A stretch of 64,000 nucleotides of DNA from Paragordius varius (GCA_964247055.1 OZ176058.1:1736001-1800000); one strand, 5' to 3'. Counted from the stretch's first letter, positions 3,560 through 64,000 are shown. Notes: generated by a model not told the origin, from the letters alone. Numbers and translations are program-made.

Positions 3560-4470
3560 ATTATATAATTAAAGTTTTTTTATCGAAAAAATATTTTATA
3601 TTAGATTAATTTACAAATATATATATATAATTGCAAATAAATTTTTAAACTTTATTGCAATAAAAAATATAGAATTTTAGAATATTATATAATTAAAGTT
3701 TTAAAAAAATATTTTATATTTAATTAATTTACAAATATATAATTGCAAATAAATTTTTAAACTTTTTTCAATAATAAAATAATAGGATTTTAGAATATTA
3801 TATAATTAAGTTTTAAAAAAATATTTTATATTTAATTAATTTACAAATCTATAATTGCAAATTAATTTTTTTTATTGCAACAATATAAAATAGGATTTTA
3901 GAATATTATATAATTAAGATTTTTTTCCGAAAATTTTATATTTAATATTTAATTAATTTACAGATATATAATTGCAAATAATTTCTTAAACTTTTTCTGT
4001 AATAAAAAAAATAGAATTTTAGAATATTATATAATTAAGTTATTCTCAAAAAAATTATTTTATATTTAATTAATTTACAAATATATAATTGCAAATAAAT
4101 TTTTAACTTTTTTTTGTACTAAAATAATAGAATTTTCGAATATTATATAATTGAGTTTTAAAAAAATATTTTATATTCAATTAATTTACAAATCTATAAT
4201 TGCAAATAAATTTTTAAACTTTTTTGCAATAAAATAATAGAATTTTAGAATATTAAATAATTAAGTTTTTGAAAAATATTTAATATTCAATTAATTTACA
4301 AATCTATAGTTGCAAATAAACTTTTAAACTTTTTTTTGTAATAAAAAATAATAGAATTTTAGAATATTATATAATTAAATTTTAAAAAATATTTTATATA
4401 TAAATATTTTATAAATTATATAATTTTAAATCAATTTTTTGTAATAAAAAAATAATAGGATTTTAGAATA
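3560..4470 (+). repeat. About 115-bp tandem array containing the acceptor and first bases of the 4459 exon
   Basis: Seven copies of AATAATAG(G/A)ATTTTAGAATAT precede the real acceptor. Confidence 0.85.
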
Positions 4471-4658
4471 TGAATTATTACAATGCATATTCCCTAATGC
4501 ACAAACAGTTGAAACTTATAGACGCCATTTTCTCCATTTATCAGCTGTTTTGATTCCACAAAAACGCCAGGAATTTCAAGAAAAACAGCTGAAAATGTCA
4601 CATTTTGAAGCACGGTTTTTACCATCTGTTCAAATTGGAAAAAATAAAAATTTGAAAG
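4459..4658 (+). CDS. HAUS4: HAUS4-like gene exon (ILEYELLQCIFPNAQTVETYRRHFLHLSAVLIPQKRQEFQEKQLKMSHFEARFLPSVQIGKNKNLK)
   Basis: AATAG|G acceptor completes codon AA|G. Donor is GAAAG|GTATTT. The peptide aligns by eye with HAUS4 'LRMEELKILSDTYTVEKVEVHRLIR'. Confidence 0.65.
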
Positions 4659-7600
4659 GTATTTAGTTTTTACAGATGTTTTAAAAATTTTAATTTGAAA
4701 AGTTTCTAAATTGATAAAAAGCTATAGGTTTTTGGGGTTAATATAGAAAAAAAATTGAAATTAATTAAAATATAGTATATCGAGGGCAAATCACTTCAAA
4801 TTGGAAATAAAAATTTGAAAGGTATTTAGTTTGTAAATTAAATGAAAATTTAGATTTTATTAAAATTGTTAAAAAGCTATAGATTTTTGGGGTAAATATA
4901 GAAAAAATAACGATATATGTCTTAAAATGCAGTACAATAAGGACAAATCGATTTAAATTGGGAATTACAGTTATTATAAATGAAAGTTTTATTATACTAA
5001 AAAGAGGTAATAAAAATTTATATTCTAAACTGTATAATATATTTGATTATAAACCTAATAATATTTTTTTGAAGCGCGTTTTTTACCATCAGTTCAAATT
5101 GGAAATAAAAATTTGAAAGGTTTTACAGTTTTTACAGATGATTTAAAAATTTTAAGTCTGAAAGGTTTCTTAAAATTGATAAAAAGCTATAGATTTTTGG
5201 GGTTAATATAGAAAAAAAAATTAAAGTTTCCTAAAATGTAGTGCAATAAGAACAAATCGATTTAAATTGGGAATTATAGTTATTAAATTAAATGAAATTT
5301 AGATTTTATTAAAATTTCTAAAAAACTTTGTATAATATATATTTGATTATAAACCTAATAATATTTTTTTGAAGCACGGTTTTTACCATCAGTTCAAATT
5401 GGAAATAAAAATTTGAAAGGTCAGTTTAGTTTTTAAATTAAATGAAATTTTAAGTTTAATTTTATTAAAATTGTTAAAAGTTATAGATTTTGGGATAAAT
5501 ATTATAGAAAAAAAAATCGATATATATCTTAAAATGCAGTACAATAAGGACAAATCGATTTAAATTGGGAATTGAATTATAGTTTTTGAATTAAATGTAA
5601 GTTTAGATTTTATACTAAAAAGAGGTATTAAAAATTTATATTCTAAACTGTATAATATATTTGATTATAAACCTAATAATATTTTTTTGAAGCGCGTTTT
5701 TTACCATCAGTTCAAATTGGGAATAAAAATTTGAATGGTATGCAGTTTTTACAGATGATTTAAATAATTTAGATAAATTTGATATCTTAAAATTGATAAA
5801 AAGCTATAGATTTTGGGGTTAAAATAGATAAAATACGATATATGTCTTAAAATGCAGTACAATAAGGACAAATCGATTCAAATTGGAAATAAAAATTTGA
5901 AAAGTATGCAGTTTTTGAATTAAGTGAAAGTTTAGATTTTTGGAATAAATATTATAGAAAAAAAATTGAAATTTCCTAAAATGCAGTATATCGAGGGCAA
6001 ATCGATTTAAATTTGGAGTTATAGTTATTAAATTAAAAGAAAGTTTAAATTTTATTAAAATTTTTAAAATTCGTGTAAAAATTTTTCTTCTAAACGGTAT
6101 AATATATTTGATTATAAACCTAATAATATTTTTTTGAAGCGCGTTTTTTACCATCAGTTCAAATTGGAAAAAATAAAAATTTGAAAGGTATGCAGTTTTT
6201 ACAGATGATTATTTAGATAAATTTGAAAGGTTGATTTCTTAAAATTGTTAAAAAGCTAAGATTTTTGGAGTTAAAATTGATAAAATATCGATATATGTCT
6301 TAAAATGCAGTATATCGTGGACAAATCGATTTAAATTGGGAATAAAAATTTGAAAGGTATGCAGTTTTACAGATGATTTAGATAAATTTGAAGTTTGACA
6401 TCTTAAAATTGATAAAAAGCTATAGATTTTTAGGGTTAATATAGAAAATTTATCTATAAATATCTTAAAATGCAGTACAATAAGGACAAATTGATTTAAA
6501 TTGGGAATTATAGTTTTTAAATTAAATTAAAGTTTGATTTTATACTAAAAAGTGGTATTAAAAATTTATATTCTAAACTGTATAATATATTTGATTATAA
6601 ACCTAATAATATTTTTTTGAAGCGCGTTTTTTACCATCAGTTCAAATTGGAAATAAAAATTTGAAAGGTATGCAGTTTTTACAGATGATTTAGATAAATT
6701 TTAAGTTTGATTTCTTAAAATTGTTAAAAAGCTATAGATTTTTGGGGTTAATATAGAAAAAATATCGATATATGTCTTAAAATGCAGTATATCGAGGACA
6801 AATCGATTCAAAATGGAAATAAAAATTTTAAAGGTATTTAGTTTTTACAGATGATTTAGATAATTTAGATAAATTTGATATCTTAAAATTGATAAAAAGC
6901 TATAGATTTTTGGGGTTAAAATAGAAAAAAAATATTGATATATCTTAAAATGCAGTATATCGAGGGCAAATCGATTTAAATTGGGAATTATAGTTATTAA
7001 TTAAATGAAAATTTAGATTTTATTAAAATTTCTAAAAAACTTATAAAAAACTTATATTCTAAACTGTATAATATATATTTGATTTTAAACCTAATAATAT
7101 TTTTTTGAAGCGCGTTTTTTACCTTCAGTTCAAATTGGAAATAAAAATTTGAAAGGTATGCAGTTTTTACAGATGTTTTAAAAATTTTAAGTCTGAAAGG
7201 TTTCTTAAAATTGATAAAAAGCTATAGATTTTTGGGGTTAAAATAGATAAAATATCGATATATATCTTAAAATGCATAAATCGAGGATAAATCGATTTAA
7301 ATTGGGAATAAAAATTTGAAAGGTATGCAGTTTTTACAGATGATTTAGATAAATTTTAAATTTGAAAGGTTTCTAAATTGAGTAAAAAACTTAGATTTTT
7401 GGGGATAAAATAGATAAAATATCGATATATGTCTTAAAATGCAGTATATCGAGAACAAATCGATTTAAATTGGAATTATAGTTATTAAATTAAATGAAAA
7501 TTTAGATTTTATTAAAATTTCTAAAAAACTTATAAAAAACTTATATTCTAAACTGTATAATATATATTTGATTTTAAACCTAATAATATTTTTTTGAAGC

Positions 7601-8750
7601 GCGTTTTTTACCTTCAGTTCAAATTGGAAATAAAAATTTGAAAGGTATGCAGTTTTTACAGATGTTTTAAAAATTTTAAGTCTGAAAGGTTTCTTAAAAT
7701 TGATAAAAAGCTATAGATTTTTGGGGTTAAAATAGATAAAATATCGATATATATCTTAAAATGCATAAATCGAGGATAAATCGATTTAAATTGGGAATAA
7801 AAATTTGAAAGGTATGCAGTTTTTACAGATGATTTAGATAAATTTTAAATTTGAAAGGTTTCTAAATTGAGTAAAAAACTTAGATTTTTGGGGATAAAAT
7901 AGATAAAATATCGATATATGTCTTAAAATGCAGTATATCGAGAACAAATCGATTTAAATTGGAATTATAGTTATTAAATTAAATGAAAATTTAGATTTTA
8001 TTAAAATTTCTAAAAAACTTATAAAAAATTTTCTTCTAAACTGTATAATATAATTGATTATAAACCTAATAATATTTTTTTGAAGCGCGTTTTTTACCAT
8101 CGATTTAAATTGGAAATAAAAATTTGAAAGGTATTTATTTAAAATTTGAAGTTTGATTTCTTAAAATTGATAAAAAGCTATAGATTTTTGGAGTTAAAAT
8201 TGATAAAATATCGATATATGTCTTAAAATGCAGTACAATAAGTACAAATCGATTTAAATTGGGAATAAGAATTTGAAAGGTTTGCAGTTTTTACAGATGA
8301 TTATTTAGATAATTTAGATAAAGATTTCTTAAAATTGATAAAAAGCTATAGATTTTGGGGTTAAAATAGATAAAATATCGATATATGTTTTAAAATGCAG
8401 TAAAATAAGGACAAATCGATTTAAAGTGGGAATTATAGTTTTTAAATTAAATAAAAATACTAAAAAGAGGTATTAAAAATTTATATTCTAAACTGTATAA
8501 TATATTTAATTTTAAACCTAATAATATTTTTTTGAAGCGCGGTTTTTACCATCAGTTCAAATTGGAAATAAAAATTTGAAAGGTATGCAGTTTTTACAGA
8601 TGATTTAGAATTTTAAGTCTGAAAATTTTCTAAATTGAGTAAAAAACTTAGATTTTTGGGGTTAAAATAGAAAAAAATATTGATATATGTCTTAAAATGC
8701 AGTATATCGAGGGCAAATCGATTTAAATTGGGAATTATAATTTAGAAAAA
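4659..8750 (+). repeat. Composite intronic tandem array containing the 3' end and donor of the 4459-4658 exon
   Basis: About 9 long copies of TTTGAAGCGCGTTTTTTACCATCAGTTCAAATTGGAAATAAAAATTTGAAAG|GT plus about 7 shorter copies. Confidence 0.9.
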
Positions 8751-9280
8751 AAGTATATTTTGTAAGTTGATTTGACAAACGTTGGAAAAACATTAAAAAA
8801 TCTATATTTTATTATAAAATAATTTAATAAAGCCCAACTATATTTGGGTTAATTTTATGTAAAGTATAGTTATTATAGTAAAAACCATTTTTTTAAAACT
8901 CTAACTTATGAATGTCACTCTGAGGCGCTAAAAAAATTTTAGCATACTGTTGTAAATAATTATATCCAACAGCTAAATAATATATAAAAAATAAAATTAA
9001 TCTAAAAATGTGCGTGAATACAATAAAAAATGAAATTAAACGTACAGATGTATAATTTTAAAGTCAAATATACTTTTAAAAGGAGCACTGTACTTTTTTT
9101 AACTTGTTTTAAATTGCCAAGTATTAAATAGCGATTTAAATTAAAAAAACACTTAGTTGTTTCTTTTATTTTAAGCTTTACAAATGGGTTGTCTCCTAAA
9201 AGAAAAATATTTATATTTATGCTTTTTTCATGTGTTGTCCGACTTAATTTTTTTACTGTAATATTTTATTTAATAATTAG

Positions 9281-9474
9281 GTAATAAAATCGATGTTAAA
9301 CCATTCAGTTTTATGGAGAAAAGGCAAAAGGCAGATATAACAAAAAACCTTAATAACTCCTCATCAGAAAACAATAATAATTCTGAAAATAATGATTATA
9401 AAATAATTCCTGATTTAGTTGAAGAATATGTGAAATTGAAACAAAAATTAGCCATTTTATCCGCAACGAAATAA
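9281..9474 (+). CDS. HAUS4: HAUS4-like gene terminal exon, copy 1 (..KIIPDLVEEYVKLKQKLAILSATK*)
   Basis: ATTAG|GT acceptor in the correct phase (G|GT), TAA at 9472-9474 and AATAAA just downstream. LVEEYVKLKQ resembles HAUS4 'LVKEYTVLKQ'. Confidence 0.65.
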
Positions 9475-9508
9475 TCTAAATAAATTTATCTATATTTATT
9501 ATCTATTA

Positions 9509-10756: not shown

Positions 10757-10758
10757 TA

Positions 10759-12259: not shown

Positions 12260-12609
12260 TAATATACCATTTACAAATTCACCCTCAAATAAAATATATG
12301 TTTTTAGATTAAATATTAACCAATATTTTTATATATTTTTAAAAAATAAAAATTTTGTTTTAACCTAAAATAATCCTGAAAAAATAATAAACTATATGCG
12401 ATAAAGATATATTTCTCATTATTATAATGAGTTATTATATTAATTCGAATACACATATAATTTATTTCTAGGGTGAACTTGAATTGTTCAAGGGTGAATA
12501 ACTCATCCTGTATTATTAATCCAAATATAATATTTTATTTAATTTGATAATAAAATGTATATTACTGTATTTAATCCGAATATATAATTTTATTTTATTA
12601 CATAATTAG

Positions 12610-12815
12610 GTAATAAAGTTGACGTTAAACCATTCAGTTTTATGGAGAAAAATCAAAAGTCAGACATAACACAAAACCTTAATAACTCATCATCAGAAAA
12701 CATTAATAAAAATGATAATTCTGAAAATCATAATTATGATAAAATAATTCCTGATTTAGTTGAAGAATATGTGGAATTGAAACAAAAATTGGCTATTTTA
12801 ACCGCAAAGAAATAG
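12610..12815 (+). CDS. Duplicated terminal exon of the HAUS4-like gene, copy 2 (..KIIPDLVEEYVELKQKLAILTAKK*)
   Basis: Same ATTAG|GT acceptor and phase, intact ORF to TAG at 12813-12815, followed by AATAAA. Differs from copy 1 by substitutions and in-frame indels only. Confidence 0.55.
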
Positions 12816-14875
12816 TTTAAATAAATTTATCTATATTTATTATCTATTATTACAGTAAAAATTGAAATTGACGGACAAAATAAATATAGAGACATATATT
12901 TTTTTCTAAAAGGCATCATTACTTTATAAACCTTGTTTTTTTTAAATATAACTCATTGTTTAAAACTGCAAAGTATAAAATGGATATGTAAATTGGTAAA
13001 ACAAGCAATTATGGATATTACGATTGTAATTAATTGATTGATATAGGATAAATTAAGGTTTAAAAAAGTATAATTGGTTGTCTTTTGTAATGAAGAAGTG
13101 TCTTGATATTTTTACGTTTTGTCCGTATAAGTTTAATTTTAAAAAAAATTTTAATTTAATAAGTTACAATATGCATATTTATGGTTGCTAATTTTACATA
13201 CACTATAGTATGGCAATTTGCAACACAGGACAGTAGTGTATGGAAAAAAGAAAGGAAAATAATTGTTAATTCAACATTGTGTTGTTTTTTTCCATACACT
13301 ACTGTTGTGTGTTGCAAATCAGCCCTACTATACTATAGTGTGAAATAAGCAAGAACCATTAAAATGCACACACTGTATTCATTTTAATAGTAAATGGTGG
13401 TCAATCAAAAACATTTTTTCGGGTGATAAGTTAGAGTAAATGGTATATTATTATAACGAAAATTAGTTTCCAATAAATTAGCGGGTCTAAATCCATAACT
13501 CACCCCAAAATGACGGCAAATGTAATTTTTAAACTTTTGAATAGTTAAAATTTTTTAATACCATTCACTATTTTAGTATACGATTTGCATTTCAAGAGTG
13601 TCCTTGAACACTTCAAGTTGGTCTTTGAACATTTCAAATAGGTCCTTGAAGAATTCAAATTGGTCCTTGAACAATTCAAGTTGGTCCTTTAACTTTATTG
13701 TTTAGTTTTTAACTTTTATCAATCAAATGGTAAATAATTCATCTATTTTTTGTTTTTAACCTATTTTCTATTATTTAACATAAATTTTAAATCGATATCA
13801 ACTTTTAATCTTAGAGAAACCGTATATTTCTTAAAATAATTTAAAATATTTATAAGATTTTATTACGAAATAAAAAAAATATATGAGTTCTCTGGGTTAT
13901 TAATTAAAATTTTTTATCAAAAACATTTAAAAGTTAATAATTTTGTTTATTTAAAAAAATAGTTTAAAACAAAAAAGTGGTTTTTCAATAAAATTTTCTA
14001 TTTTTAAATGAATAAATACATAATAAATAAAGAAAATTAAGTTAATAAATAATGAATTAAAAATCAATGCAAAAATTATGGTTAAATTAAAAATTTATAA
14101 ATTTTAAGGACCAACTTGAAGTGCAAATGGTATATATCTATTAACCCAAAAGCATAAGATTTATATTGTTGGTAACAATAATAATTATATTAATAGTAAA
14201 TAATTTATTCACAGGTTTAAAACGCAACATAAGATAAATATATATATAGTGTTCATTTTTTTACACAAATATAAAAAATTATAATTTCCAAAAAATTATA
14301 TTAGAGTTTATAAATTATATTAAGATATTTTAACATTCAAAATATTTGTAATATTTAAACAAAAGTACCAGTAAAAATAATTTAAACAATAATCATTAAA
14401 TAATTAATATATCTATATTGCCATATTTACACGTATATATATATATATATATACATATATTTGCATAATAAATATTTAAATTGCATATTTTTTTTAAAAA
14501 AACTCAATATTCAAAAAATTTTTACAGGTGATTGTCACGCATGCTTACGACAGATGCCATTTTTAATTTTATTTTTAAAGACAAATATTACATATAAAAA
14601 TAAAGATATAAAACCTATTTTCGTACATGTAAAAAAATGATTTTTAAATTTTTTTAGTATTATTATATCTGAGGATTTATAAACTTTAATAAATAACACT
14701 AAAAGAGTTTGTTTATGTTAAAAATTGCCGACAATATATGTTCATTTATAAAACTAATATAAATCAGATTATTTATATAAAAAATTTTGCAAAAATTATA
14801 TATATAATAACAACGTAATTGCATTTTGCATAATATGATGATGTTTTTTTAATTTTTAGAGGTGTTTTCGATTTT

Positions 14876-15003: not shown

Positions 15004-15839
15004 CTAAAAAAATTAGAAGTGAAAATAAATTGATTTCAACTTTAAATAATTGCGAAATAAAATAATTTCAATTTTAATAATTGGAAAAAATGATATTTTA
15101 AGTAAAAAATATTTTTTAGTTTTAACAGTAAAAATTGAAATATAAGTAAAAAAGGATATTTTATATAGAACCATATAACTCATATTAAATGAGAACAGTC
15201 GATGAAAATAATTTTATGTGGTACCAATATGAAACCAAAAAAGATAGGTTATTTTCCATATGGTAAAGTTTAACACATGGTTTAAAAAAGTTTGGTGTTT
15301 ACACTTTTTATGTTTTGTTAATAATATTATACATATTAGTAAAAGGTTATATGTTTAAAATTCACGAACTCTATTCTAATAAATCAACAATCAGAATATC
15401 TTTTATATTTTCAAAAACGCTAGTTAAATATATCTTTTTAAATTATTTATCTAAAGATTTTTCATAAAATTTATGTTAATAAAAATGTAATAAATTTTGC
15501 CCAAATATAAATATAAAATGCTTCCTTATTTTGAATATATATTTTATATGTTCAAAATTCCCGACCTCTATTATGATACAATCAACATATATAAATATAT
15601 CTTTTATATCTTCAAAAACGCTAGTTAAACATATCTTTTAGACTATTTTTCTAAATTTAACTTATAAATTTATGTTAAAAATGTAGTAAATTTTGCCCTT
15701 AAATGTTAGTATAAAATAAAAATTTAACTTTAATAAAATTTATTGCCGACTTTTATTCCAATATAATCCACAATTATATAATATCTTTTATATTTAAAAA
15801 ACGCTAGTTAAATATATTTTTAGACTTGTTTATAATTTA

Positions 15840-16650
15840 ACTTTTTGTAAATATGTTAATAAAAATGTAATAAATTTGCCCTTAAATATAAATATAAATT
15901 AAAAATTTCACTCTTTATAAAATTTATTTTAATAAATTTGCCCTTAAATATTAATATAAAATAAAAATTTAACCTCCTTATAAAATTTATGTTAATAAAA
16001 ATGTATTAAATTACTTTAAATATAAATATAAAATAAAAATTTAAATTTAATAAAATTTATGTTAATAAAAATGTAGTAAATTTTGCCCTTAAATATTAAT
16101 ATAAAATAAAAATTTAACTTATAATAAAATTTATGTTAATAAGAATGTATTAAATATTGCCCTTAAATATTAATATAAAATAAAAATTTAACTTTATTTA
16201 ATAAAATTTATGTTAATAAAAATGTAATAAATTTTGCCCTTAAATATAAATATAAAATAAAAATTTAACTTTATTTAATAAAATTTATGTTAAAAATGTA
16301 ATAAATTTTGCCCTTAAAAATAAATATAAAATAAAAATTTAACTTTATATAATAAAATTTATGTTAAAAATGTATTAAATTTTGCCCTTAAATATTAGTA
16401 TAAATTAAAAATTTCACTCTTAATAAAATTTATTTTAATAAAAATGTATTAAATTCCCTTAAATTTAAATATAAAATAAAAATTTAAATTTATATAAAAT
16501 TTATGATAAAAATGATTTTGCCCTTAAATATAAATATAAAATAAAAATTTAACTTTATAGAATAAAATTTATCTTAATAAAAATGTAGTAAATTTTGCCC
16601 TTAAATATTATTATAAAATAAAAATTTAACCTCTTTACAAAATTTATGTT
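15840..16650. repeat. About 60-bp AT-rich intronic tandem array
   Basis: Repeating AAATTTATGTTAATAAAAATGTAATAAATTTTGCCCTTAAATAT unit in intron 4 of the LDLRAD2-like gene. Confidence 0.85.
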
Positions 16651-17125
16651 TAAAATTCCCGACCTTTATTCTAAAGTAATCCACAAATAAAAAAAAATTA
16701 TTTTTTAAAACGCTAGTTAAATATATTTTTAGAGTAAATTTTTATATGATTTAAATTAATAAAATTTATGTTAAACATATCTTTTAGACAATTTTCCAAA
16801 TAAACTTTTTAAAAATTTGATTTATAAAATTTTTGTTAAAAATGTATTAAATATTAATATAAAATAGTATATACATCTAGCATCGCAAGTGCGTTCATCC
16901 GAGCCATAATTATAAAAATATCTTTTATATTTTCAAAAACGCTAGTTAAATATATTTTTAAAGTAAATTGTTTATTTTTTTTTTCATTTTAAAAATTTAA
17001 GTATATATATAAATTTATGTTTATAAAAATGTAATAAATTTACTCTTAAATTATTTTTCTAAATAAACTTTTTATAAAATTTATGTTAATAAAAATCTAA
17101 TAAAAATGTAATATAAAATATTTAC

Positions 17126-17242
17126 ATCTAGCATCGCAAGTCCGTTCATCCGAGCCATCTACACAATGTTGAACACCATCGCATTTAAGCTTTCCATTTA
17201 TGCAGTAACCGTCACTTACACACTTGAAGCCATCGCAAACAG
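17126..17242 (-). CDS. LDLRAD2-like gene, exon 4: LDL-receptor class A repeat
   Basis: [38 protein letters not shown] has the six-Cys LDLa pattern with DGSDE. Boundaries CATAG| and T|GTAAAT, phase 1 to phase 1. Confidence 0.9.
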
Positions 17243-17686: not shown

Positions 17687-18844
17687 TATATGGACATAAC
17701 AAAACATAAAGACAAATTTTTTTGCAAAAAGACAGTCGTACTTTTTTAAACCTAATTTTTCCTATATAAATTGTAATATAATTGATTTTGATACCAATAT
17801 TGCATACTTTGCAGTTTAAAAATCAATGAGTTATAAGTTTAAAAATAGTAGAGCGGCCTTATGTAAAAAAATTTGTTTTTATGCTTTTTTATGTTTTCCC
17901 CTACATTACAGAGAAAATTGAAATTATATGGACAAAACTTGAAAATATAAAGACAAATATTTTTTTCAAACAAGACAACCAAATATTAACTTGATTTTAA
18001 GTCATTAAACACTTGAAGCCATCACAAAGAGCTATGTTTGAGGGAGAAAAAAAGTAAAAAGATTTATTAAATATAAAACATTCCTAAAATATAAACCTCA
18101 ATCTTTATATAAACATATGACTCGTTCGATTAGTAAAGTATAGTTTTGAATCAGTAACGAATCGAAAAATGCGACGAGAGGGGCGCATTTACAAATATAT
18201 GATCATTAAAAAATAGAATAAAAATTGAAATTATACTATGGACAAAACTTGAAAATTTAAAGACGAATATTTTTTTCAAATAAGACAACCCATACTTTTT
18301 TAATCTTGTTTTTTTTATAACTCATTGTATTAAACTAAATGTCAATTGCTAACACAATCAATTATGTACTTTTTAGGACGGTTGTATTTAAATTATTCTT
18401 ATAGGATAAATTAAGATTTAAAAAAGAATAGTTTTCTTTTGAGGTAAAAGTTTGTCTTATGTTTTGGTAATCAATTTATAGTGTATATATATATTTTTAT
18501 CAAAAAACAATCAAACTTTTAAAATTATTTGTTTACAATCGAAAATTAATATAATTAATTGTGTTAGCAATTTCCATATTCATTTAGACTTTTAATCAAT
18601 TTTAAACAATAAGTTACACTCAAAGCCAAGTTTTCAAAAGTATGGGGTTATCTTTAGAAAACAATATTTGTCTTTATATTTAAAGGTTTTGTTCGTATAA
18701 TTTTAATTTTACTGTATAATATATATATATATATATATATATCATGATGCCGCCATCTAACGCAAATTATTTTGCAAGTTAGGACATCCATTTAATAAAA
18801 TATTTTATATATATATATATATGCTAATATTCTGTCAAGAAAAT

Positions 18845-19190
18845 AGATTATTAAAAAAATAGCTATGAAACAAAACTTTAATTTTTTCAAGAAAAATTCA
18901 AATATAAAAATTAGTTTTTTAACCTCTTTAAAGATTAAAAAAAATAGCTATGAAACAAAAATTTAAAATTTTTAGAATCAAATCAAATATAAAATTAACT
19001 TTTTTTCTTTAAAGATTATTAAAAAAATAGCTATGAAATAAAACTTTAATTTTTTTCAAGAAAAAATCAAATATAAAATTAGTTTTTTAACCTCTTTAAA
19101 GATTAAAAAAATAGCTAAGAAATAAAACTTTAATTTTCGAATTTTCAAGAAAAAATTAAATATAAAATTAACTTTTTAACCTCTTTTAGC
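18845..19190 (-). repeat. About 72-bp array containing the exon 3 donor junction of the LDLRAD2-like gene
   Basis: Units contain TTTTTAACCTCTTT, which is AAAGAG|GTTAAAAA on the minus strand. Confidence 0.75.
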
Positions 19191-19319
19191 CATGGGCGTA
19201 ACCAAAATATCAAAACCGCGGCCTGGGCCCTTAGTAGATCCACCAGTAAGTTCGGCAACCAAATTGTTTGATTTGAAAATTGTTGGTTTTGGCATAGGGG
19301 ATTCACAAGTCATATCAAT
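19181..19319 (-). CDS. LDLRAD2-like gene, exon 3 (second half of CUB-like domain)
   Basis: TTACAG|ATTGAT acceptor; IDMTCESPMPKPTIFKSNNLVAELTGGSTKGPGRGFDILVTPMAKR; AGAG|GTTAAA donor; phases match both neighbours. Confidence 0.8.
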
Positions 19320-21000: not shown

Positions 21001-21209
21001 CGCTTCAGTAGGGTCATTTTCAGCAAATATTCTAAGCCGGGTATTACAATCTTTAATATCATAATCCTTGAATCGAACTAAGAAATGTTGATCAAAACCA
21101 GCAGTTCTGAGTCGAACTCGACAAGCTTTTCGCCCCTCGAAAGGTTTATAAATTAATTCAGCTCCCTCTGTCCTATGCACAGTTTCTCCACAATCTTTTG
21201 TCATGTCAT
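21001..21209 (-). CDS. LDLRAD2-like gene, exon 2 (first half of CUB-like domain)
   Basis: TCTTTAG|AT acceptor; DMTKDCGETVHRTEGAELIYKPFEGRKACRVRLRTAGFDQHFLVRFKDYDIKDCNTRLRIFAENDPTEA; GCG|GTATTT donor. Confidence 0.85.
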
Positions 21210-49700: not shown

Positions 49701-49740
49701 TATTAATCTATATATTTATAAAAATGGAAAATGCTGGCTT

Positions 49741-55571: not shown

Positions 55572-56763
55572 GTAATATGTTGTGTGTTAGTAAGTATGTA
55601 TTATGTTTAAAATAATCGGATATTGAACAAAGACAACCTTTTTTCAAGCCTAAGCAACATTTTTTTATCCGCCACATTTTTTTAAGCAAACGCGACATTT
55701 TTCATTCAAACGCAACATTTTTTCATCCAAATGCAACTTTTTTTAAGCAAAAACTACTAAAAAAAATGTTACTTTAGACTGAAAAGTGGTTTGTATGTTT
55801 TTTGAAGAAATTTTAGATTTTAGAATTTTTGGGCTTTTTTGATAATTTTATTTTTGATAATTTAAGAAGTTTTTTGGTATTTTTAGGTTATTGAAATAGT
55901 GTTTATTTTTTGTAAATTCTTAGATTTTTAATAATTATATGTGAATTTCATAGGGTGGTATTTTTAATAATTTTTTGAGAAAATATAATTTTTTCTTCAA
56001 TAAAATTTTTGGGATTTTTTCGTTAAATTACTATGTGGAGCTCATTAAGTAAAATTTAATTTTCTCGGGATGTCGTAGGAAAGATTACCTTCAATTATCA
56101 AAATATATTAAATGTTTGAGAATGTTTTCGAACTTTTTAAACTGTTTTTTCTGAAATAATGGTTTTTTTGGCATTTTTGTTGATAATTGCTTCGTTCTCT
56201 GGAAGTTTCTTGAAGTTTTAAAAAATTCGTATTAATAACTTATTATGAAATAATTATTAAATTATCAAGGTTTGATGTAAATATAAGTAAGTTTTTTAAA
56301 ATATCAATCTTTTTTATATCATTATTTAGTCAATGTATTCTGTCATATATAACAGACTGAGTATAAGTTAAAAAACATAACATAAATATATTATAACCTT
56401 TGATTTATGAATATGGGGGATCAAATGAAAAATTTAAAAAAATTTTAATGTCGAAATATATTGGATGTAAGCGCATGCGCACAATCGTATCGTCTGCTTG
56501 AAACAGTTCAATAAATAATTTATTGTCCGTTAATCTAATTTCCATTTACTCATACTTTGCTATTTATATAAAAATCAATACATACTTCAGCCTAACTAGA
56601 AAAACTATATTATAATTTCGTTTCGAAAAGCCATCTTTACTAAACTAAGTATGTTTCTCTTTGTTCTTTAAACCAGTCCAAAACTGGCTTCGCAGACCGC
56701 ATTTTCGACTCAAAGAATCCGGCGAGCGGCATTTCAAATATATATATGTGGGATTCATAAATA

Positions 56764-57522: not shown

Positions 57523-57687
57523 GTATTGGAAAAACGCATAAAGATGCAGCTAGTATACGGACACCCTACCCTATACCCGCCACGTGTGGACTTTACTATT
57601 ACGAGGTGCGAATCGTTAGTAAAGGTCGCGATGGATATATGGGGATTGGATTCTCTTCCCAAGCCGTTAGTATGAATCGATTACCAG
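57523..57687 (+). CDS. RanBPM: RanBPM SPRY exon 2
   Basis: TTTAG|GT acceptor; [55 protein letters not shown]; CCAG|GTTTTT donor. Confidence 0.92.
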
Positions 57688-59800
57688 GTTTTTTAGGAAT
57701 TTGGAAGATTTTAAGAAATTTTGTTTTAAAGTTTTAGAAATTTTTTAGTTTTTTAATTTTAAGAGTTTTTAAAGTTTTCAAAGTCTTATAAGGTTTAAAA
57801 AATGGAAAAAAATGATAAGTTTAATCAAGAGTTTTGGGGTTTGAAAGTTAAAATTAGTTTGAGATTTTTGACATTTTAGTTTTGAAGTTTGAAAAATTGA
57901 AAAAAAAGTTATTGGTTTCTCTTCCCAAGCCGTTAGTATGAATCGGTTACCAGGTTTTTGCGATTTGGAAGATTTTGAGATGAAAGTTTAATAAAAAGTT
58001 TTAGTAGAAAAGTTTGAAAGTTTTAGTTTTAGATTTAGAGTTTTAGAGGTTAGGTTTTCAAAAGTAAGAGTCTTATAAGGTTTAAAAATTTTCTTTTTTT
58101 AGGTTTTATGGGTTTTCTTTTAAAGCTTTTAATATGAATAGATTACCATTTTTTTGAGATTTTAAGAATTTGAAAAAGTTTGTTTTTAAAGTTTAATTAA
58201 AAAAGTTGATGTTTAAAAAGTTTTAGTTTGAGATTTAAGTTTAAAAGTTTTAGTTTAAGATATATGGGAATTGATTTCTCTTCCCAAGCCGTTAGTATGA
58301 ATCGGTTACCAGGTTTTTGAATTTTGAATTTTAAGATTTTTAAGATTATGAGAGAAAGTTTTAGTTTTAAAGTTTTTTAGTTTTAAGAGTTTTTAAAGTT
58401 TTAAAATAAAAAAAGTTTAATTTGAGATTTTAGAAAATTTAAAAATATGGTTTCTCTTCCCAAGCCGTTAGTATGAATCGGTTACCAGGTTTTAGGAATT
58501 TGGAAGATTTTGAGATGAAAGTTTAATAAAAAGTTTTAGCAGAAAAGTTTGAAAGTTTTGAGATTTAAGTTGTATTAAAAGTTTGTAAAGTAAGATTGAT
58601 GAATTCGAAATTTTTATAATTTTAGGGAAAGTTTTAGTGGAAAAAGTTTAATTGACAGTTTTTAAAAGTTTTTAAAAGTTTTTACACGTCTTAAATGTCT
58701 TATAAGGTTTAAAAAATGGAAAAGTTTTTACTTTTTTGAGTTTAAAATAAGTTTTTTTTAAATACTTTTATATCCTCTCTTCCCATTATGAATCAGCTTC
58801 CAATGAACTTTTTTAGCTTTTTGAATTTTTTTAAAGGTTTATTTAAAGTTTAAAATAAAAATTTTAAAGTTTAGGTTTTTAAACAAAATTTAGATAAGTT
58901 TTTTTTTAAATTTTTATAAGTTCTCTTCCCAAGCCGTTAGTATGAATCGGTTACCAGGTTTTTGAATTTTGAATTTTAAGATTTTTAAGATTATGAGAGA
59001 AAGTTTTAGTTTTAAGAGTTTTTAAAGTTTTAGTTTTAAGTTTAATAGTTAAATTAAGAGTTTTTAATGTTTGAGAAATTAAAAAAAAGTTTTTAAGTTA
59101 TATTTAAGTTCAAAAGTTTTAAACAGTTTATTATTTTAAGAAGGATTTTTAGTTGTAAAGTTTAGGTTTTAAAAGTCATAAGAATCTTATAAGGTTTTAA
59201 TAAGTTTTTATTCTTTAAGTTTTTTAGTTTAAAAAAAAAGTTTTTTTTTAAATTTTTATGGGTTATATTCCCATGAATTTTGTAAGGTTTAAAGTTTTTA
59301 AAATAAAAGTTTTAAAGTAGTTTAGGTTTTTTACAAAAAGTTTTAAAATTCATTAAATTTCTATGACATCTCTTCCCAAGCCGTTAGTATGAATCGATTA
59401 CCAGGTTTTTGAATTTGAAAGATTTTTGGAATTTTAGGCAAATTTTTAGAAAATTTTAGTGAAAAATTTTATTTTTAAAAGTTTTTAAGTATAAGAAGAA
59501 AAGTTTTAAATTTTTATGGGGTTTACTTTCAAGCTTTTTAATATGAATTGATTACCAGGTTTTTTTTGATTTTACAAAATTTTAGTGATTTTTTTTTGAG
59601 ATTTTTGACATTTAAGTTTAGAAAGTTTTAGTTTTAAAGTTTTATTAAATGTTTTTAAAGTTTATAATATAAAAAAAATGAAAAAGTTTTTATGTTTAAG
59701 AAAAGTTTTTTTTTTAATTTTTATGGATTTTCTTCTCAAGCCGTTAGTATGAATTGGTTACCAGGTTTTTTTAAGATTTTAGAAATTGTTTTTTATTTTG
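57688..59800 (+). repeat. Tandem array of the RanBPM exon 2 3' end plus donor
   Basis: TTCTCTTCCCAAGCCGTTAGTATGAATCGGTTACCAG|GTTTT at about 57917, 58275, 58451, 58922, 59389, 59730, plus 3-4 decayed copies. Confidence 0.95.
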
Positions 59801-61768
59801 AGAAAATTTCAGTGGCAAAAAAACCTATTTTTGACAAAAAAGAGTTAACAACGAATTTATTTTATTTGAAACTTTCAAAATCTTTTAAAACATTTTCTAA
59901 AAAACAATTTTTAGATTAAACACAGTTACGGTTACCATGGCGACACTCTTTCTTTGTGTTTCAGTATAATGATAAAAAGCTTTTTTTGACAAAACAAGAG
60001 TTAACGAAAGTATTTCATTTGAAACTTTCAAAATCTTTTAAAACATTTTCTAAAAAACAATTTTTTAAACACAGCTACGGTTACCATGGCGACACTCTGT
60101 GTTTCTGTTTCAGTATAATGATAAAAAGCTTTTTTTGACAAAAATGAGTTATTGAATGGAAAAAAATGAAATTTAAAACTTTCAAAACATTTAATCTTTT
60201 AAAACTTTTCCAAAAAACAATTTTTAGGTTTAAACACAGTTACGGTTACCATGGCAACGACGGAGGGTCCTTTTGATGTTAAACAAAGATAAAACCTATT
60301 TTTAAAATGAAATATCGAATAAAACAAAATGAAATTTAAAACTAAAACATTAAAATCATTTAAAACATTTTCTAAAAAACAGTTTTTAGGTTTAAACACA
60401 GTTACGGTTACTATGGCCATACTCTGTGTTTCTGTTTCAGTATAATGATTAAAAGCTTTTTTTGACAAAAATGAGTTATTGAATGGAAAAAAATGAAATT
60501 TAAAACTTTTAAAACATTTAATCTTTTAAAACTTTTCCAAAAAAGCCAATTTTTAGGTTTAACACAGTTACGATTACCATGGCAACGACGGAGGGTCCTT
60601 TCAATATAATGGTTAAAACCTATTTTTTTAGAAAAAATGAAATATCGAATAAAACAAAATGAAATTTAAATAAAATCATTTGAAACTTTTTTTCAAAAAA
60701 TATTTAAATAATATAGTACGGTTACCATGGCGACACTCTGTCTTTGTGTTTCAGTATAGTGATAAAAACCTGTTTTTTGAAAAATTGAAATATCGAATTG
60801 AACAAAATGGAATTTAAAATTTTCAAAACTTCAAAATCTTTTAAAACATTTTCTAAAAAACAATTTTTCAAACACAGCTACGGTTACCATGGCGACACTC
60901 TGTGTTTCTATTTCAGTATAATGACAAAAACCAGTTTTTTGAAAAAATGAAACATCGAATTGAACAAAATGAAATTTAAAGCTATAAAGACTTTTGCAAC
61001 TTTTTTTTCTAAAAACAACATTTTTCTAGGTTGGGATAAACACAGTTACGGTTACCATGGCGACACTCTGTGTTTCTGTTTTAGTATAATGTTAAAACCT
61101 CTTTTTGAAAAAAAGCTTTTTTTAAAACTTTCAAAATCTTTTAAAATCTTTGAAACTCTCTAAAACAACTTTTTCAGGTTGGGATAAACATAGTTACGGT
61201 TACCATGGCGACACTCTGTGTATAATGTTAAAAACCTGTTTTTGAAAAAATGAAATTTTCAAATTAAAGTTATGAAAATCATTTAAAACTTTTTGAAAAC
61301 ACTTTTCTAGGTTGGGATAAACATAGTTACGGTTACCATGGCGACGACGGAGGGTTCTAATATGACGACCTATTTTTTTTGTTAAAAACTACTTTCTTAC
61401 AAAAAAGGAATTTTGCAATATTACCTACCATAATTAAAATTTCAAAACTTAAAATCTTTTAAAACTTTTTGCAAAAACAACTTTTCTAGGTTGGGATAAA
61501 CATAGTTACGGTTACCATGGCGACACTCTGTCTTACCTATTTGAAAAAATGAAATATTGTATTGAACAAAATGAAATATCGAATTGAACAAAATGAAATT
61601 ATAAAACTTTAAAAAGACTTTTAAAACTTTTTGAAACTTTTTGTAGGTTGGGATAAACATAGTTACGGTTACCATGGCGACACTCTGTCTAATAAAATAT
61701 CGAATTGAACAAAATGAAATTTAAAACTTTAAAAAGACTTTTAAAACTTTTTGAAAACACTTTTCTAG
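59800..61768 (+). repeat. Tandem array of the RanBPM exon 3 acceptor plus 5' end
   Basis: Twelve copies of (TTCTAG|GTTGGGAT)AAACA(C/T)AGTTACGGTTACCATGGCGAC before the real exon. Confidence 0.95.
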
Positions 61769-61936
61769 GTTGGGATAAACATAGTTACGGTTACCATGGC
61801 GACGACGGGCGTTCCTTCTGTTGTTCTGGGACGGGTCAGCCCTATGGTCCAACTTTTACCACGGGGGATATCATTGGGTGTGGAATTAATACAGCTGAAA
61901 ACTATTGTTTTTACACGAAGAATGGCGTGGATTTGG
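61769..61936 (+). CDS. RanBPM: RanBPM SPRY exon 3 (gene continues beyond the window)
   Basis: TTCTAG|GT acceptor; [56 protein letters not shown]; G|GTTAGT donor. Confidence 0.92.
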
Positions 61937-63221
61937 GTTAGTTTAAAAATTAATTATTTTAATTTAATTTTATTTATTTTAAATTAAAATATTATTTAAA
62001 ATTAATATATATTTGATAGTTTCTATATATATAATTTTTTTGTAAAGTATTGTTTTTGAATTGACACGGCTGACAATTATTGTTTTTACACGAAGAATGG
62101 CGTAGATTTGGGTTAGTTTTAAGAATTAAAATTAATTTTTTTTTAATTTTAAAATTTTTATAAAATTTAGATATTATTTAAAATGAATATATATTTGATA
62201 GTTTCTCTATATATAATTTTTTTGAAAAGTATTGTTTTTGAATTAACACGGCTGACAATTATTGTTTTTACACGAAGAATGGCGTAGATTTGGGTTAGTT
62301 TTTGAGATTTTAAAATTAATTTTTTTTAATTTTAATTTTTTTTTGAGAAAATTAATATATTATTTAAAATTTATATATATATATATATTTGATAGTTCCT
62401 ATATATATAATTTTTTTGAAAACTAATTGTTTTTGAATTAACACGGCTGACAACTATTGTTTTTACACGAAGAATGGCGTAGATTTGGGTTAGTTTTAAG
62501 AATTAAAATTAATTTTTTTTTAATTTTAAAATTTTTATAAAATTTAGATATTATTTAAAATTTTAGTTTTTATTTGAAGTTTTTTTGATTGATTCATGTA
62601 TTTATTTTTTTTAATTCAATTTCATGATTTTGGCGAGTGTAAAAAGATTTTTATATTGATATTTTATAAGTTTTTAATAAATTATAAAAAAAATTTAAAA
62701 AATCGCCATTTTTTGCTATATATAGTTCAAAAAATATCGTGGATTTTGGGTGACATTATTAGAAATTTTTTTTTGAGAACAGTAAAATATAAATAATTTT
62801 TTAATATTAATGATTTATTTTCAATGATTCATATATTTATTTCAACATCATTTTTAATATTTTCAGAGTTTTTTTATTATAATTTTTAAAAAACTGGCCG
62901 ATTTTAGCTGTATTTTTGGAAACAAGGCTTAATATTATTTGTTATAGTCTAAGAATGTTGGGTTTTGTAGATTAATTTTGATTTTTTTGAAAATTTTCAG
63001 AAAATAAATTATTTTTTTGGAATTTGTTATAAATTATTGTTTAAAATTGAAATATTTTCCTAAATACAAAATTAAAAATACAGCTAAAAACTATTGTTTT
63101 TAGCACTATGAATGGCGTGGATTTGGGTTAGTTAAAAATTAATTAATTTTTTATGAAAATTTTCTAAATTTTATTTTGAGAACATTAAAATATTATTTAA
63201 AATTATTATTTATTTGATAGT

Positions 63222-63267
<46 letters not shown>

Positions 63268-64000
63268 TTGAAAAGTATTGTTTTTGGATTAAAATACGGC
63301 TGATAATTATTTTTTTTATGCGAAGAATGGTGTGGATTTGGGTTATTATTTGAAATTTTTTTATGTTTAATTTTTAGATATTCTTAAAAAATATAAAAAT
63401 ATAGTAAATTAAATTTTTTTTTGATAATGTTTTTCGAATTTGCGGTTGTTAAAATTTGTAATCAATAAATATTTATTTTATTAATATTTTCTGAGAACGA
63501 ATTTTTATGTTAAAATAATAATTTGATTTATAAAAGGTAGTACAATGGATTAACTAAAAAAAATTATAATAAGATGTAAATTAAACAAAATTTGAAAAAA
63601 TATAAATATAAATTATGATAACAAAAAAATTGCAAAGTGTGCAATGTTCGAAAATTTTGGATATAGTATAAATTAATAAATTTTACGAGAATTCATCAAA
63701 TTATTATTTAACAATATTTATTTTAATAATTTCTTAGTTAAGAATTTTTTGAAACTATAGTTTTTACACGAAGAATGGATTTGAATTATATTTTTGAGAT
63801 TTTTTATTTAATTGATTTTTGACTCTGCAAAAATTGTATTTTGATTGAGTTTTTAACAAATTATAAAAAAAATTGAAAAATGGTCTTTATATATATATAT
63901 ATAATATATTTGAAAACACAGGTGATAGATTTTTTTACAAGAATGGCGTGGATTTGGGTTAATTTTATGAATTAAAATTAATTTTTTTTTTTAATTTTAA
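61937..64000 (+). repeat. Tandem array of the RanBPM exon 3 3' end plus donor
   Basis: ACACGGCTGACAATTATTGTTTTTACACGAAGAATGGCGTAGATTTGG|GTTAGT-like copies at about 62065, 62245, 62440, 63080, 63295, 63760 (decayed), 63935. Confidence 0.95.

What the first reader, a model, noticed from the sequence alone, without database searches (positions are those of the whole stretch)
3560..64000. Genome-style pattern: long introns built from tandem 'echoes' of their own splice junctions
Seen in all four coding units: segments straddling an exon/intron boundary are tandemly amplified into the intron. Donor echoes lie downstream of the true donor (4659-8750, 16870, 18845-19190, 20780-20880, 57.7-59.8 kb, 62-64 kb). 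Acceptor echoes lie upstream of the true acceptor (3560-4458, 18010, 19630-20660, 45.5-46.6 kb, 59.9-61.7 kb). Many retain intact GT or AG. The short introns (34 and 284 nt) lack them. Inference: either a junction-focused duplication process drives intron growth with decoy sites ignored by exon definition, or the echoes are used. Several junctions read AG|GT (GAAAG|GT, CCAG|GT, CTAG|GT, AGAG|GT), the form of recursive-splicing ratchet points, so arrays might let a short-intron spliceosome remove multi-kb introns stepwise. I do not know of this being described as a genome-wide mechanism. Caveat: exon-derived repeats are simply easier to notice against an AT-rich background.
Basis: partly seen in the sequence, partly recalled or inferred. 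Interest (0 to 1): 0.88.

Follow-up and report, generated by a model that had tools for sequence, protein, structure and literature searches.

The report
Introns inflated by exon-edge repeats
In this very AT-rich animal genome most long introns are swollen by head-to-tail copies of the neighbouring exon's edge and its splice signal; single cases of this are known elsewhere, it is unusually common here, and I found no sign that the copies are used in splicing.

Summary
In the four genes of the window, 13 of 21 exon-intron junctions have at least one local copy spanning the junction. Four introns of 2.1-4.6 kb are 84-95% local tandem repeat. The 34- and 284-nt introns have none. DNA contigs from two independent samples carry copy-specific pieces of the RanBP9 arrays at 99-100% identity, so this is not assembly stutter.

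The polarity (donor copies downstream, acceptor copies upstream) follows from geometry for any tandem duplication that spans a junction.

Copies are closest to other copies at fixed higher-order offsets (91-100% identical) and only 81-86% identical at best to the true junction. So founding was old and amplification inside the arrays is recent. GT/AG decay no slower than neighbouring bases.

Junction enrichment is modest once arrays are collapsed (2.4-3.8-fold, P about 0.002-0.0003). It is absent in raw coverage, because half the window is locally repeated.

The recursive-splicing idea has no support: motifs are partial, introns are short, and no RNA covered the gene.

The kind is already described as amphioxus "mirage" minisatellites and the human F7 intron-7 repeat. 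Earlier notes of this scan report the same pattern in other windows of this genome. It is a new, unusually dense member of a known kind.

The parts
3586..4440 (+). Acceptor-copy array of gene 1 exon E1. Period 112, higher-order period about 351. Seven copies of the last ~60 nt of intron plus the first 14-22 nt of exon. The AG is kept in 6 of 7.
4459..4658 (+). Gene 1 exon E1. The gene is an orphan with no homologue. The frame joins exon 1011-1141 to exon 9281-9474.
4603..8779 (+). Donor-copy array of E1 with 16 copies of two types (56-nt and about 30-36-nt exon part). Higher-order period 489. It fills 89% of the 4622-nt intron and contains a perfect 541-nt run at offset 489 (6999-8028).
9281..9474 (+). 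Gene 1 terminal exon E2. There are no upstream acceptor copies, but the whole exon is duplicated downstream.
12591..13826 (+). An 89%-identical duplicate of 9262-10497. Its left breakpoint lies 19 nt upstream of E2's acceptor. It carries a copy of E2 (about 12610-12813) with intact AG, an open 67-codon frame and a stop.
15351..17127 (-). Array abutting the donor of gene 2 exon Z. Units of 74/151 nt derive from the first ~80 nt of the intron plus at most 2 nt of exon. One copy at 16870-16905 has a 40-nt exon part and an intact GT. The array makes up 84% of the 2122-nt intron.
17126..17242 (-). Gene 2 exon Z (LDL-receptor class A domain).
18005..18045 (-). Single acceptor copy of exon Z, with intact AG and about 30 nt of exon.
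18845..19186 (-). Donor copies of exon Y. Period 84 with a 6-8-nt exon part. AGAG|GT is kept in 2 of 3.
19181..19319 (-). Gene 2 exon Y (second part of a domain that looks CUB-like by eye; no Pfam match).
19606..20713 (-). Three to four dispersed, decayed acceptor copies of exon Y.
20770..20860 (-). Two donor copies of exon X. Both have lost GT.
21001..21209 (-). Gene 2 exon X (first part of a domain that looks CUB-like by eye; no Pfam match).
45495..46439 (-). Four acceptor copies of the gene 3 exon that starts at 45261, spaced about 270-290 nt apart.
46900..49707 (-). About 12 copies of a whole small exon of gene 3 with its flanks. Only the copy at about 49350-49458 is open. The donor GT is kept in 2 of 12.
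56052..56128 (+). One decayed donor copy of RanBP9-like exon A (donor at 55571). It is 73% identical and the AGGT is deleted.
57523..57687 (+). RanBP9/10-like exon B (SPRY domain). It ends CCAG|GT.
57894..59812 (+). Eight donor copies of exon B with a 43-54-nt exon part. AG|GT is kept in 7 of 8.
59854..61706 (+). Twelve acceptor copies of exon C of two types (35- and 57-nt exon part). Higher-order period 327. AG|GT is kept in 8 of 12; four of the seven distal copies have deleted it.
61769..61936 (+). RanBP9/10-like exon C (SPRY domain).
62052..64000 (+). Seven donor copies of exon C. Period 182, higher-order period 377. GT is kept in 6 of 7. The array runs off the end of the window.

Best explanation
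These are 'mirage'-type minisatellites, meaning neutral by-products of local tandem duplication in a genome that duplicates short segments very often.

Step 1 (inferred). A segment of roughly 75-460 nt was duplicated in tandem. One breakpoint lay at most 60 nt inside an exon and the other lay in the adjoining intron, which was then short.

Step 2 (follows from geometry). The copy that stays joined to the rest of the exon remains the working junction. The other copy is stranded in the intron. Donor copies therefore always lie downstream and acceptor copies upstream.

Step 3 (shown). Each seeded array then grew by multi-unit duplications within itself, as ordinary satellites do. The newest copies are 91-100% alike at fixed offsets.

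Step 4 (shown). Copies decay with an AT bias. Their GT/AG are neither protected nor purged.

Step 5 (inferred). The copies do no harm because within one intron all donor copies lie 5' of all acceptor copies, so no acceptor-then-donor pseudo-exon is formed. The true donor is also the first in 5'-to-3' order, as in human F7 intron 7.

Duplications inside exons, or containing both borders of an intron, would be removed by selection. What survives in a short intron is therefore mostly junction-spanning.
For: - Junction-spanning copies occur at 13 of 21 junctions. All 13 flank introns longer than 1.6 kb, apart from the whole-exon copy of terminal exon E2, which lies downstream of the gene. None of the 4 junctions of the 34- and 284-nt introns has one.
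- Four introns are 84-95% local tandem copy. By coordinates they collapse to about 0.38, 0.63, 0.42 and about 1.1-1.2 kb.
- The nearest relative of almost every copy is another copy at a higher-order offset (489, 535, 377, 327 or 351 nt; 91-100% identity). Identity to the true junction is at best 0.81-0.86. A perfect 541-nt run lies at offset 489.
- Fixed differences between the true exon and its copies are mostly synonymous (3 of 4). This fits the exon continuing to evolve under constraint.
- G/C columns vary about twice as much as A/T columns in the copies.
- GT is kept in 72 of 74 dinucleotide cells. Within each large family that is no more than the adjoining exon-side bases (1.00 vs 0.98, 0.94 vs 0.91, 0.93 vs 0.88). 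AG is kept at 0.78 against 0.72-0.74 for its neighbours.
- The exon sequences of the RanBP9-like gene align to human RanBP9/10, so the exons are the source and the copies are derived.
- Copy-specific 150-260-nt pieces are present at 99-100% identity in DNA contigs from two samples, at depth similar to the unique flanks.
- Published precedents behave the same way: amphioxus mirages (PMC3087553) and the human F7 IVS7 repeat with silent pseudo-donors (PMC1557585).
Against: - Junction bases are still 2.4-3.8 times more often tandemly copied than collapsed background.
- Exon-side breakpoints all lie within 60 nt of the junction, although the exons are 117-209 nt long.
- At least two junctions were hit by two separate events with different exon breakpoints: E1 donor at 4603 and 4624, and exon C acceptor at +35 and +57.
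- Copy-to-copy divergence is lower in the exon-derived part than in the intron-derived part.
- Minority variants are mildly enriched at third codon positions (46/34/63, P=0.012).
- No RNA data show that the copies are ignored.
Confidence: 0.62

Rival explanations
1. A mutational hot spot is tied to exon edges. Breakage or template switching would be favoured at the GC-richer exon / AT-rich intron boundary, or be coupled to transcription or splicing. Founding duplications would then really be aimed at junctions rather than merely filtered by selection.
For: - Enrichment is 2.4-3.8-fold in collapsed coordinates.
- Array edges lie 0-60 nt inside exons at 6 of 21 junctions against 0.38 expected.
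- All exon parts are at most 60 nt long.
- The same junction was hit repeatedly with new exon breakpoints.
- A 1.26-kb duplication starts 19 nt before the acceptor of the last exon.
- Arrays with at least 2 copies cover 19% of collapsed genic DNA against 6.7% of the rest.
Against: - Short ancestral introns plus purifying selection predict most of these features.
- Raw coverage shows no enrichment.
- Recent growth is internal to the arrays, not from the true junction.
- Much of the intergenic DNA is transposon-derived and probably younger, which lowers its count of events.
- The sample is only 21 junctions.
Confidence: 0.2
2. The copies are used. AG|GT copies would act as ratchet points for stepwise or nested removal of the kilobase introns, or as regulated decoys that tune splicing.
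For: - AG|GT is intact in 14/16, 7/8, 2/2 and 8/12 copies of four families.
- Splicing from the true donor to the AG of a donor copy would regenerate the same donor sequence.
- The genome also has introns of 22-34 nt (and earlier notes of this scan), so long introns might be hard for its spliceosome.
Against: - Only 4 of the 12 half-exon families have AG|GT at all, a share no higher than the 4 of 10 true exons here that end in AG.
- Donor-copy AGs follow purine-rich exon sequence (T fraction 0.20-0.35, against 0.40-0.75 at true acceptors). Other AGs lie between the nearest T-tract and the ratchet AG.
- The regenerated donor at acceptor copies would be GTTGGG, unlike the A/T-rich true donors.
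- Distal copies have deleted the motif.
- There is no excess conservation of GT/AG.
- The introns are 1.7-4.6 kb, whereas fly recursive sites lie mostly in introns over 40 kb (PMC6110457).
Confidence: 0.05
3. Ongoing gene conversion between the true exon and its copies keeps the exon-derived parts alike. Earlier notes of this scan proposed this for the SPT16 gene.
For: - Exon-derived parts of copies are less diverged from each other than intron-derived parts (0.44 vs 0.72 variants per A/T column, 0.88 vs 1.29 per G/C column).
- Minority variants show a mild third-position excess (P=0.012).
- Single copies share an exon-specific state, for example 59345 (CGA) and 6128 (the AAA tract).
Against: - Fixed differences persist in most copies, for example GCG against GCA in 14 of 16.
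- The true copy is almost never a copy's nearest relative.
- Intron-derived parts have four times more gapped columns, so their apparent divergence is inflated by alignment error in low-complexity sequence.
- Serial founding at different times would also produce a third-position signal.
Confidence: 0.1
4. Assembly artefact: long-read stutter created or multiplied the copies.
For: A perfect 541-nt run at offset 489 (6999-8028) could be stutter. No read or contig bridged a whole array.
Against: - Copies differ by 10-35%, so each is unique.
- At least 10 copy-specific pieces of 150-260 nt occur at 99-100% identity in contigs of two samples and of a third, low-depth run.
- Depth over the arrays is similar to that of the unique flanks.
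Confidence: 0.03

Closest known systems
'Mirage' minisatellites of amphioxus (Adh3; globin genes BflGb6 and BflGb9)
   Same: - Tandem repeats whose unit spans an exon-intron boundary.
- Both 5' and 3' boundaries are affected.
- Many units keep AG/GT.
- Regular splicing was reported unaffected.
- Units show concerted evolution within clusters, and the edge copy is excluded from it (PMC3087553).
   Different: - Amphioxus has a few loci with 1-6 units of 10-160 nt. Here 13 of 21 junctions in one 64-kb window are affected.
- Arrays here reach 4.2 kb and have higher-order periods.
- Some introns here are filled from both ends.
- The host is a different animal lineage with about 20% GC.
Human F7 intron 7 37-bp VNTR, whose first unit spans the exon 7 donor
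   Same: The authentic donor is followed by identical pseudo-donors that stay silent. The most upstream site is chosen (PMC1557585).
   Different: It is a single locus with short units, on the donor side only. Splice-site choice there was shown by experiment. Here it is inferred.
Recursive-splicing ratchet points of Drosophila and vertebrates
   Same: An acceptor and a donor are juxtaposed (AG|GT) inside an intron.
   Different: - Known sites lie mostly in introns over 40 kb, tend to sit near intron midpoints, and are supported by RNA intermediates (PMC6110457).
- Here the motif is an accidental by-product of exons that end in AG or begin with GT. It lacks a good acceptor context in donor copies, decays, and lies in introns of 1.7-4.6 kb.
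Intron gain by tandem duplication of an AGGT-containing exon segment (Rogers model; potato RdRp case, PMC4974935)
   Same: An internal gene duplication creates extra splice signals.
   Different: In that model both breakpoints lie in the exon and a new intron is born. Here one breakpoint lies in an existing intron, which simply grows.

Membership tests
Mirage-type minisatellite (tandem repeat spanning an exon-intron boundary) | A head-to-tail array lying in the intron and contiguous with the exon | tested here: met
   Objective arrays end 2-56 nt inside the exon at 6 junctions. TRF gives periods of 74-489.
Mirage-type minisatellite (tandem repeat spanning an exon-intron boundary) | The unit holds an exon-derived part, the splice dinucleotide and an intron-derived part | tested here: met
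   Alignments of 12 families. The exon parts of the RanBP9-like gene encode residues conserved in human RanBP9/10.
Mirage-type minisatellite (tandem repeat spanning an exon-intron boundary) | Units evolve in concert within the cluster, and the authentic edge copy stands apart | tested here: met
   Nearest relatives are other copies (91-100% identity). The true copy is at most 0.86 identical to any copy.
Mirage-type minisatellite (tandem repeat spanning an exon-intron boundary) | Normal splicing uses the authentic site only | not testable with these tools
   RNA run X6 had zero depth on exons B and C.
Mirage-type minisatellite (tandem repeat spanning an exon-intron boundary) | Length polymorphism between alleles or individuals | tested here: inconclusive
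   Contig joints that skip 109-373 nt inside the arrays occur in samples X1, X3 and X5. The short sides are only 21-43 nt, so they could be repeat mis-joins.
Recursive-splicing site | Juxtaposed 3' and 5' splice sites (AG|GT) | tested here: inconclusive
   Present in 4 of the 12 half-exon families, with 31 intact copies. Absent in the other 8.
Recursive-splicing site | A strong pyrimidine tract directly upstream of the AG | tested here: not met
   Donor-copy AGs have T 0.20-0.35 and Y 0.20-0.50, against medians of T 0.60 and Y 0.70 at true acceptors. Earlier AGs intervene. The feature is met only in the exon C acceptor copies.
Recursive-splicing site | The motif is conserved above its neighbours | tested here: not met
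   Retention of GT/AG equals that of the adjoining bases within families. Four of the seven distal copies lost the motif.
Recursive-splicing site | Located in very long introns | tested here: not met
   Introns here are 1.7-4.6 kb, against more than 40 kb in flies.
Recursive-splicing site | Splicing intermediates, saw-tooth coverage or lariats in RNA | not testable with these tools
   No RNA covered the locus.

The most novel reading that the evidence does not exclude
The AG|GT copies form a working ladder. The kilobase introns of this genome, which also has 22-34-nt introns, would be removed in many short recursive or nested steps through the donor and acceptor copies. Junction duplication would then have created a splicing aid rather than junk.
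Probability: 0.05. Interest if true: 0.85.

Novelty: new member of a known kind. Interest (0 to 1): 0.45.

Why it matters
If the density seen here, and in the other windows noted by this scan, holds across the genome, this animal is a natural experiment in two respects.

First, introns here have grown several-fold, not only by transposon insertion but largely by amplifying their own borders. That is a concrete and datable route of intron expansion.

Second, hundreds of genes would carry arrays of near-perfect decoy splice sites next to the real ones. RNA from this species could show directly how a spliceosome picks the outermost sites, through order, exon definition or scanning.

It also matters in practice. 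Such arrays will mislead gene finders and repeat maskers in this genome.

Tried and rejected
- RNA test. RNA run X6 gave zero depth on exons B and C, so use of copy sites could not be examined.
- Identity of gene 1. I found no hit among 1.84 billion representative proteins, no lead from the protein atlas and no Pfam family. Its exons rest on open frames and splice signals only.
- Orthologous introns in relatives. The search for homologous proteins with exon C returned only hits at or below 83% identity from other animals and no close relative. No cross-species comparison was possible.
- My first, sensitive BLAST criterion (word 7, E<=1e-3) turned out to be non-specific. It gave a local hit for 63% of random positions outside arrays. 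I replaced it with hand-checked alignments that include the GC-richer exon part, an objective array map, an edge-coincidence test and a collapsed-coordinate baseline.
- My early estimate of 20-40-fold enrichment was dropped in favour of 2.4-3.8-fold.
- Transposon family: rejected. Junction queries hit only their own intron, and depth over the arrays equals that of the flanks.
- Rfam and tRNA scans found nothing.
- The species was not identified. Earlier notes call it a hairworm relative. The Gordionus genome preprint has no occurrence of 'intron' or 'tandem' in its main text.

Full report
**What the window is.** The window has about 20% GC. It holds no tRNA or Rfam RNA and is full of tandem repeats, with 142 TRF rows. 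I built four gene models.

- Gene 1 (+ strand) has exons ending at 170, then 205-726, 1011-1141, 4459-4658 (E1) and 9281-9474 (E2, with a stop). Its introns are 34, 284, 3317 and 4622 nt. It has no detectable homologue.
- Gene 2 (- strand) has exons X 21209-21001, Y 19319-19181, Z 17242-17126 (an LDL-receptor class A domain) and a terminal transmembrane exon 15003-14876.
- Gene 3 (- strand) has an exon starting at 45261 and a small exon near 49350-49458.
- Gene 4 (+ strand) is a RanBP9/10 orthologue. Exon A ends at 55571, exon B is 57523-57687 and exon C is 61769-61936. These were fixed by alignment to human RanBP9/10 chains.

Self-alignment of each junction against the window shows same-strand copies only in the junction's own intron. 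Alignments show that each copy carries an exon-derived part, the splice dinucleotide and an intron-derived part.

| Junction | Copies | Exon part or note |
|---|---|---|
| E1 donor | 16 | 56 nt or about 30-36 nt |
| E1 acceptor | 7 | 14-22 nt |
| Exon B donor | 8 | 43-54 nt |
| Exon C acceptor | 12 | 35 nt or 57 nt |
| Exon C donor | 7 | 54 nt |
| Exon Z donor | one 40-nt copy, plus an array with at most 2 nt of exon | |
| Exon Z acceptor | 1 | |
| Exon Y donor | 2-3 | 6-8 nt |
| Exon Y acceptor | 3-4 | |
| Exon X donor | 2 | GT lost in both |
| Gene 3 acceptor | 4 | |

A stricter search added two more. One is a decayed donor copy of exon A at 56052-56128. The other is a whole copy of terminal exon E2 at about 12610-12813, with an intact acceptor and an open frame. 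In all, 13 of 21 junctions are affected. Gene 3's small exon is copied whole about 12 times.

**The arrays are real DNA.** Logan contigs from two samples of the same species label (X1, X3; depth about 300-500) and from a third low-depth run (X5) carry at least 10 copy-specific pieces of 150-260 nt inside the gene 4 arrays, at 99-100% identity. Depth over the arrays is similar to that of the unique exon flanks. No contig bridges a whole array, so copy number is not proven. The perfect 541-nt run at offset 489 (6999-8028) remains unchecked.

**How much of the introns is repeat.** Four introns (3317, 4622, 2122 and 4081 nt) are 84-95% local same-strand repeat, and the X-Y and Y-Z introns are 32%. 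The A-B intron of gene 4 scores 0% by this map, although one decayed donor copy lies in it. By coordinates, collapsing each array to one unit leaves about 0.38 kb (gene 4 B-C), 0.63 kb (gene 1 E1-E2) and 0.42 kb (gene 2 Z-TM). The fourth intron (gene 1, 1142-4458) collapses only to about 1.1-1.2 kb, which still includes MITEs. These introns were therefore short before the arrays grew. That last step is inference.

**Polarity.** If a segment spanning a donor is duplicated in tandem, the upstream copy stays attached to the exon and the downstream copy lands in the intron. The mirror holds for acceptors. A second consequence is that all donor copies in an intron lie 5' of all acceptor copies. No acceptor-then-donor pseudo-exon is created.

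**How the arrays grow.** Nearly every copy's closest relative is another copy at a fixed multi-unit offset:

| Pair | Identity | Offset (nt) |
|---|---|---|
| 7099/7588 | 100% | 489 |
| 6128/6611 | 99% | 483 |
| 57894/58429 | 95% | 535 |
| 62052/62429 | 98% | 377 |
| 60161/60488 | 93% | 327 |
| E1 acceptor copies | about 0.91-0.93 | about 351 |

Identity to the true junction never exceeds 0.81-0.86. Founding was therefore old, and growth since then is ordinary satellite-like amplification inside the array. At two junctions two nested founding events are visible, with different exon breakpoints: 4624 then 4603, and +35 and +57 of exon C.

**Decay and selection.**
- GT is kept in 72 of 74 dinucleotide cells of donor copies. 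In each large family the adjoining 12 exon-side bases are kept just as well (1.00 vs 0.98, 0.94 vs 0.91, 0.93 vs 0.88).
- AG is kept at 0.78, against 0.72-0.74 for its neighbours. The splice signals are neither protected nor purged.
- G/C columns vary about twice as much as A/T columns. This fits neutral, AT-biased decay.
- The true exon is closer to each copy than the copies are to one another in the exon part. In the intron part there is no such difference. This is expected if only the exon is constrained.
- Three of four near-fixed exon-versus-copy differences are synonymous.
- Two weak signals remain unexplained. The exon-derived parts of copies differ less from each other than the intron-derived parts do, though the latter have four times more gapped columns. 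Minority variants also lean towards third codon positions (46/34/63, P=0.012). These could reflect serial founding, some gene conversion, or alignment noise.
- The whole-exon copies of gene 3 kept the donor GT in only 2 of 12. This contrasts with the half-exon copies and hints at selection against true pseudo-exons. The copies are old and not independent, so the hint is weak.

**Is the process aimed at junctions?**
- An array edge lies 0-60 nt inside the exon at 6 of 21 junctions, against 0.38 expected (P about 1.5e-6).
- The window is saturated with local repeats. About half of random positions, and 26-30% of positions outside the arrays, also have a strong local same-strand copy. Raw coverage therefore shows no enrichment.
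- Weighting each base by 1/(copies+1) to approximate pre-expansion DNA gives a baseline of 22% (at least one copy) and 11% (at least two copies). Junction bases score 11/21 and 9/21. That is 2.4-3.8-fold, with binomial P of about 0.002 and 0.0003.
- This modest excess, the breakpoints within 60 nt of the exon edge, and the repeated hits at one junction leave room for a junction-linked or gene-linked mutational bias. I put that at about 0.2.
- Short ancestral introns plus removal of exon-disrupting duplications predict most of the pattern without any such bias.

**Recursive splicing.**
- AG|GT is intact in 31 copies but exists in only 4 of the 12 half-exon families. That share is no higher than the 4 of 10 true exons here that end in AG.
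- In the two big donor families the ratchet AG follows purine-rich exon sequence, and other AGs lie between it and the nearest T-tract. The T fraction upstream is 0.20-0.35, against 0.40-0.75 at true acceptors.
- At exon C acceptor copies the regenerated donor would be GTTGGG, unlike the A/T-rich true donors.
- Four of the seven distal copies have deleted the motif.
- Fly recursive sites lie mostly in introns over 40 kb (PMC6110457). These introns are 1.7-4.6 kb.
- The RNA run I could lay had no reads on the exons. The idea is therefore unsupported rather than refuted.

**What is known.** Tandem repeats spanning exon-intron boundaries are described as 'mirages' in amphioxus Adh3 and globin genes. 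They occur at both boundary types, with AG/GT often kept, splicing unaffected and concerted evolution within clusters (PMC3087553). The human F7 intron 7 VNTR starts in exon 7, and its pseudo-donors stay silent because the most upstream site is chosen (PMC1557585). The structures here meet the sequence-level features of that kind.

What differs is scale: most long-intron junctions are affected, the arrays reach kilobases with higher-order structure, and some introns are filled from both ends. Earlier notes of this scan report the same pattern in other windows and pieces of this genome (SPT16, DGAT1, PSMB1, RUVBL1, ERp44 and others). I did not check those. The Gordionus hairworm genome preprint has no occurrence of 'intron' or 'tandem' in its main text. 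I did not identify the species.

**Verdict.** It is a dense, genome-style occurrence of a known kind of repeat, best explained by neutral tandem duplication and array growth in ancestrally short introns. A junction-linked mutational bias remains possible, and a splicing function is unlikely.

Noticed in passing
window 12591-13826 (copy of 9262-10497): This is a duplicate of gene 1's last exon and its downstream flank, 89% identical. It keeps the acceptor AG, an open 67-codon frame with an in-frame indel, and the stop. It could be an alternative last exon or a young pseudo-exon.
   Followed up: partly
window 6999-8028: Two perfect copies of the 489-nt higher-order unit (a 541-nt exact run at offset 489). 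This is either a very recent duplication or assembly stutter. It was not covered by the reads call.
   Followed up: no
window 46900-49707, - strand: About 12 whole copies of a small gene 3 exon, of which only one is open. The donor GT is kept in 2 of 12, far less than in the half-exon copies. That would fit selection against complete pseudo-exons.
   Followed up: partly
window 171-204: A 34-nt GT-AG intron in gene 1 (gtactaaa...atatag). This fits the very short introns noted elsewhere in this genome.
   Followed up: no
window 33156-38570: A 5.4-kb satellite with units of about 100-195 nt. It is built around a MITE-end motif (TTTACAGTAAAAACT...GGACAAAACGTAAAAATATAAAGAC) that also occurs singly in introns, for example at about 9500-9560 and 18700-18760.
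   Followed up: no
window 2260-3548, 25948-26008, 30784-30911, 39241-39893, 41792-42123, 51010-51125; variant at 10257-10737 and 13588-13693: A dispersed element carrying short internal arrays of a 21-nt unit (AGGGTGAATTTGAATTGTTCA, or the variant AAGGACCAACTTGAACTGTTC) in both orientations. It is probably a MITE family.
   Followed up: no
window 10960-11498 and 55634-55751: The same 21/77-nt minisatellite (TTTTTCAAGCAAACGCAACAT) occurs between genes and again about 60 nt inside the RanBP9-like intron A-B. It is probably carried by a transposon.
   Followed up: no
window 49700-50610, - strand: Two adjacent copies (offset 516) of a GC-richer segment with overlapping open frames (...FHTGWARTG...). 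It is probably a transposon fragment duplicated in tandem.
   Followed up: no
window 57300-63200 (reads): Run X5 carries a different organism label but holds pieces of this locus at about 4-fold depth that are identical or nearly so (0-1 differences, apart from one more divergent piece). It may be a host or mixed sample, or a labelling difference.
   Followed up: no
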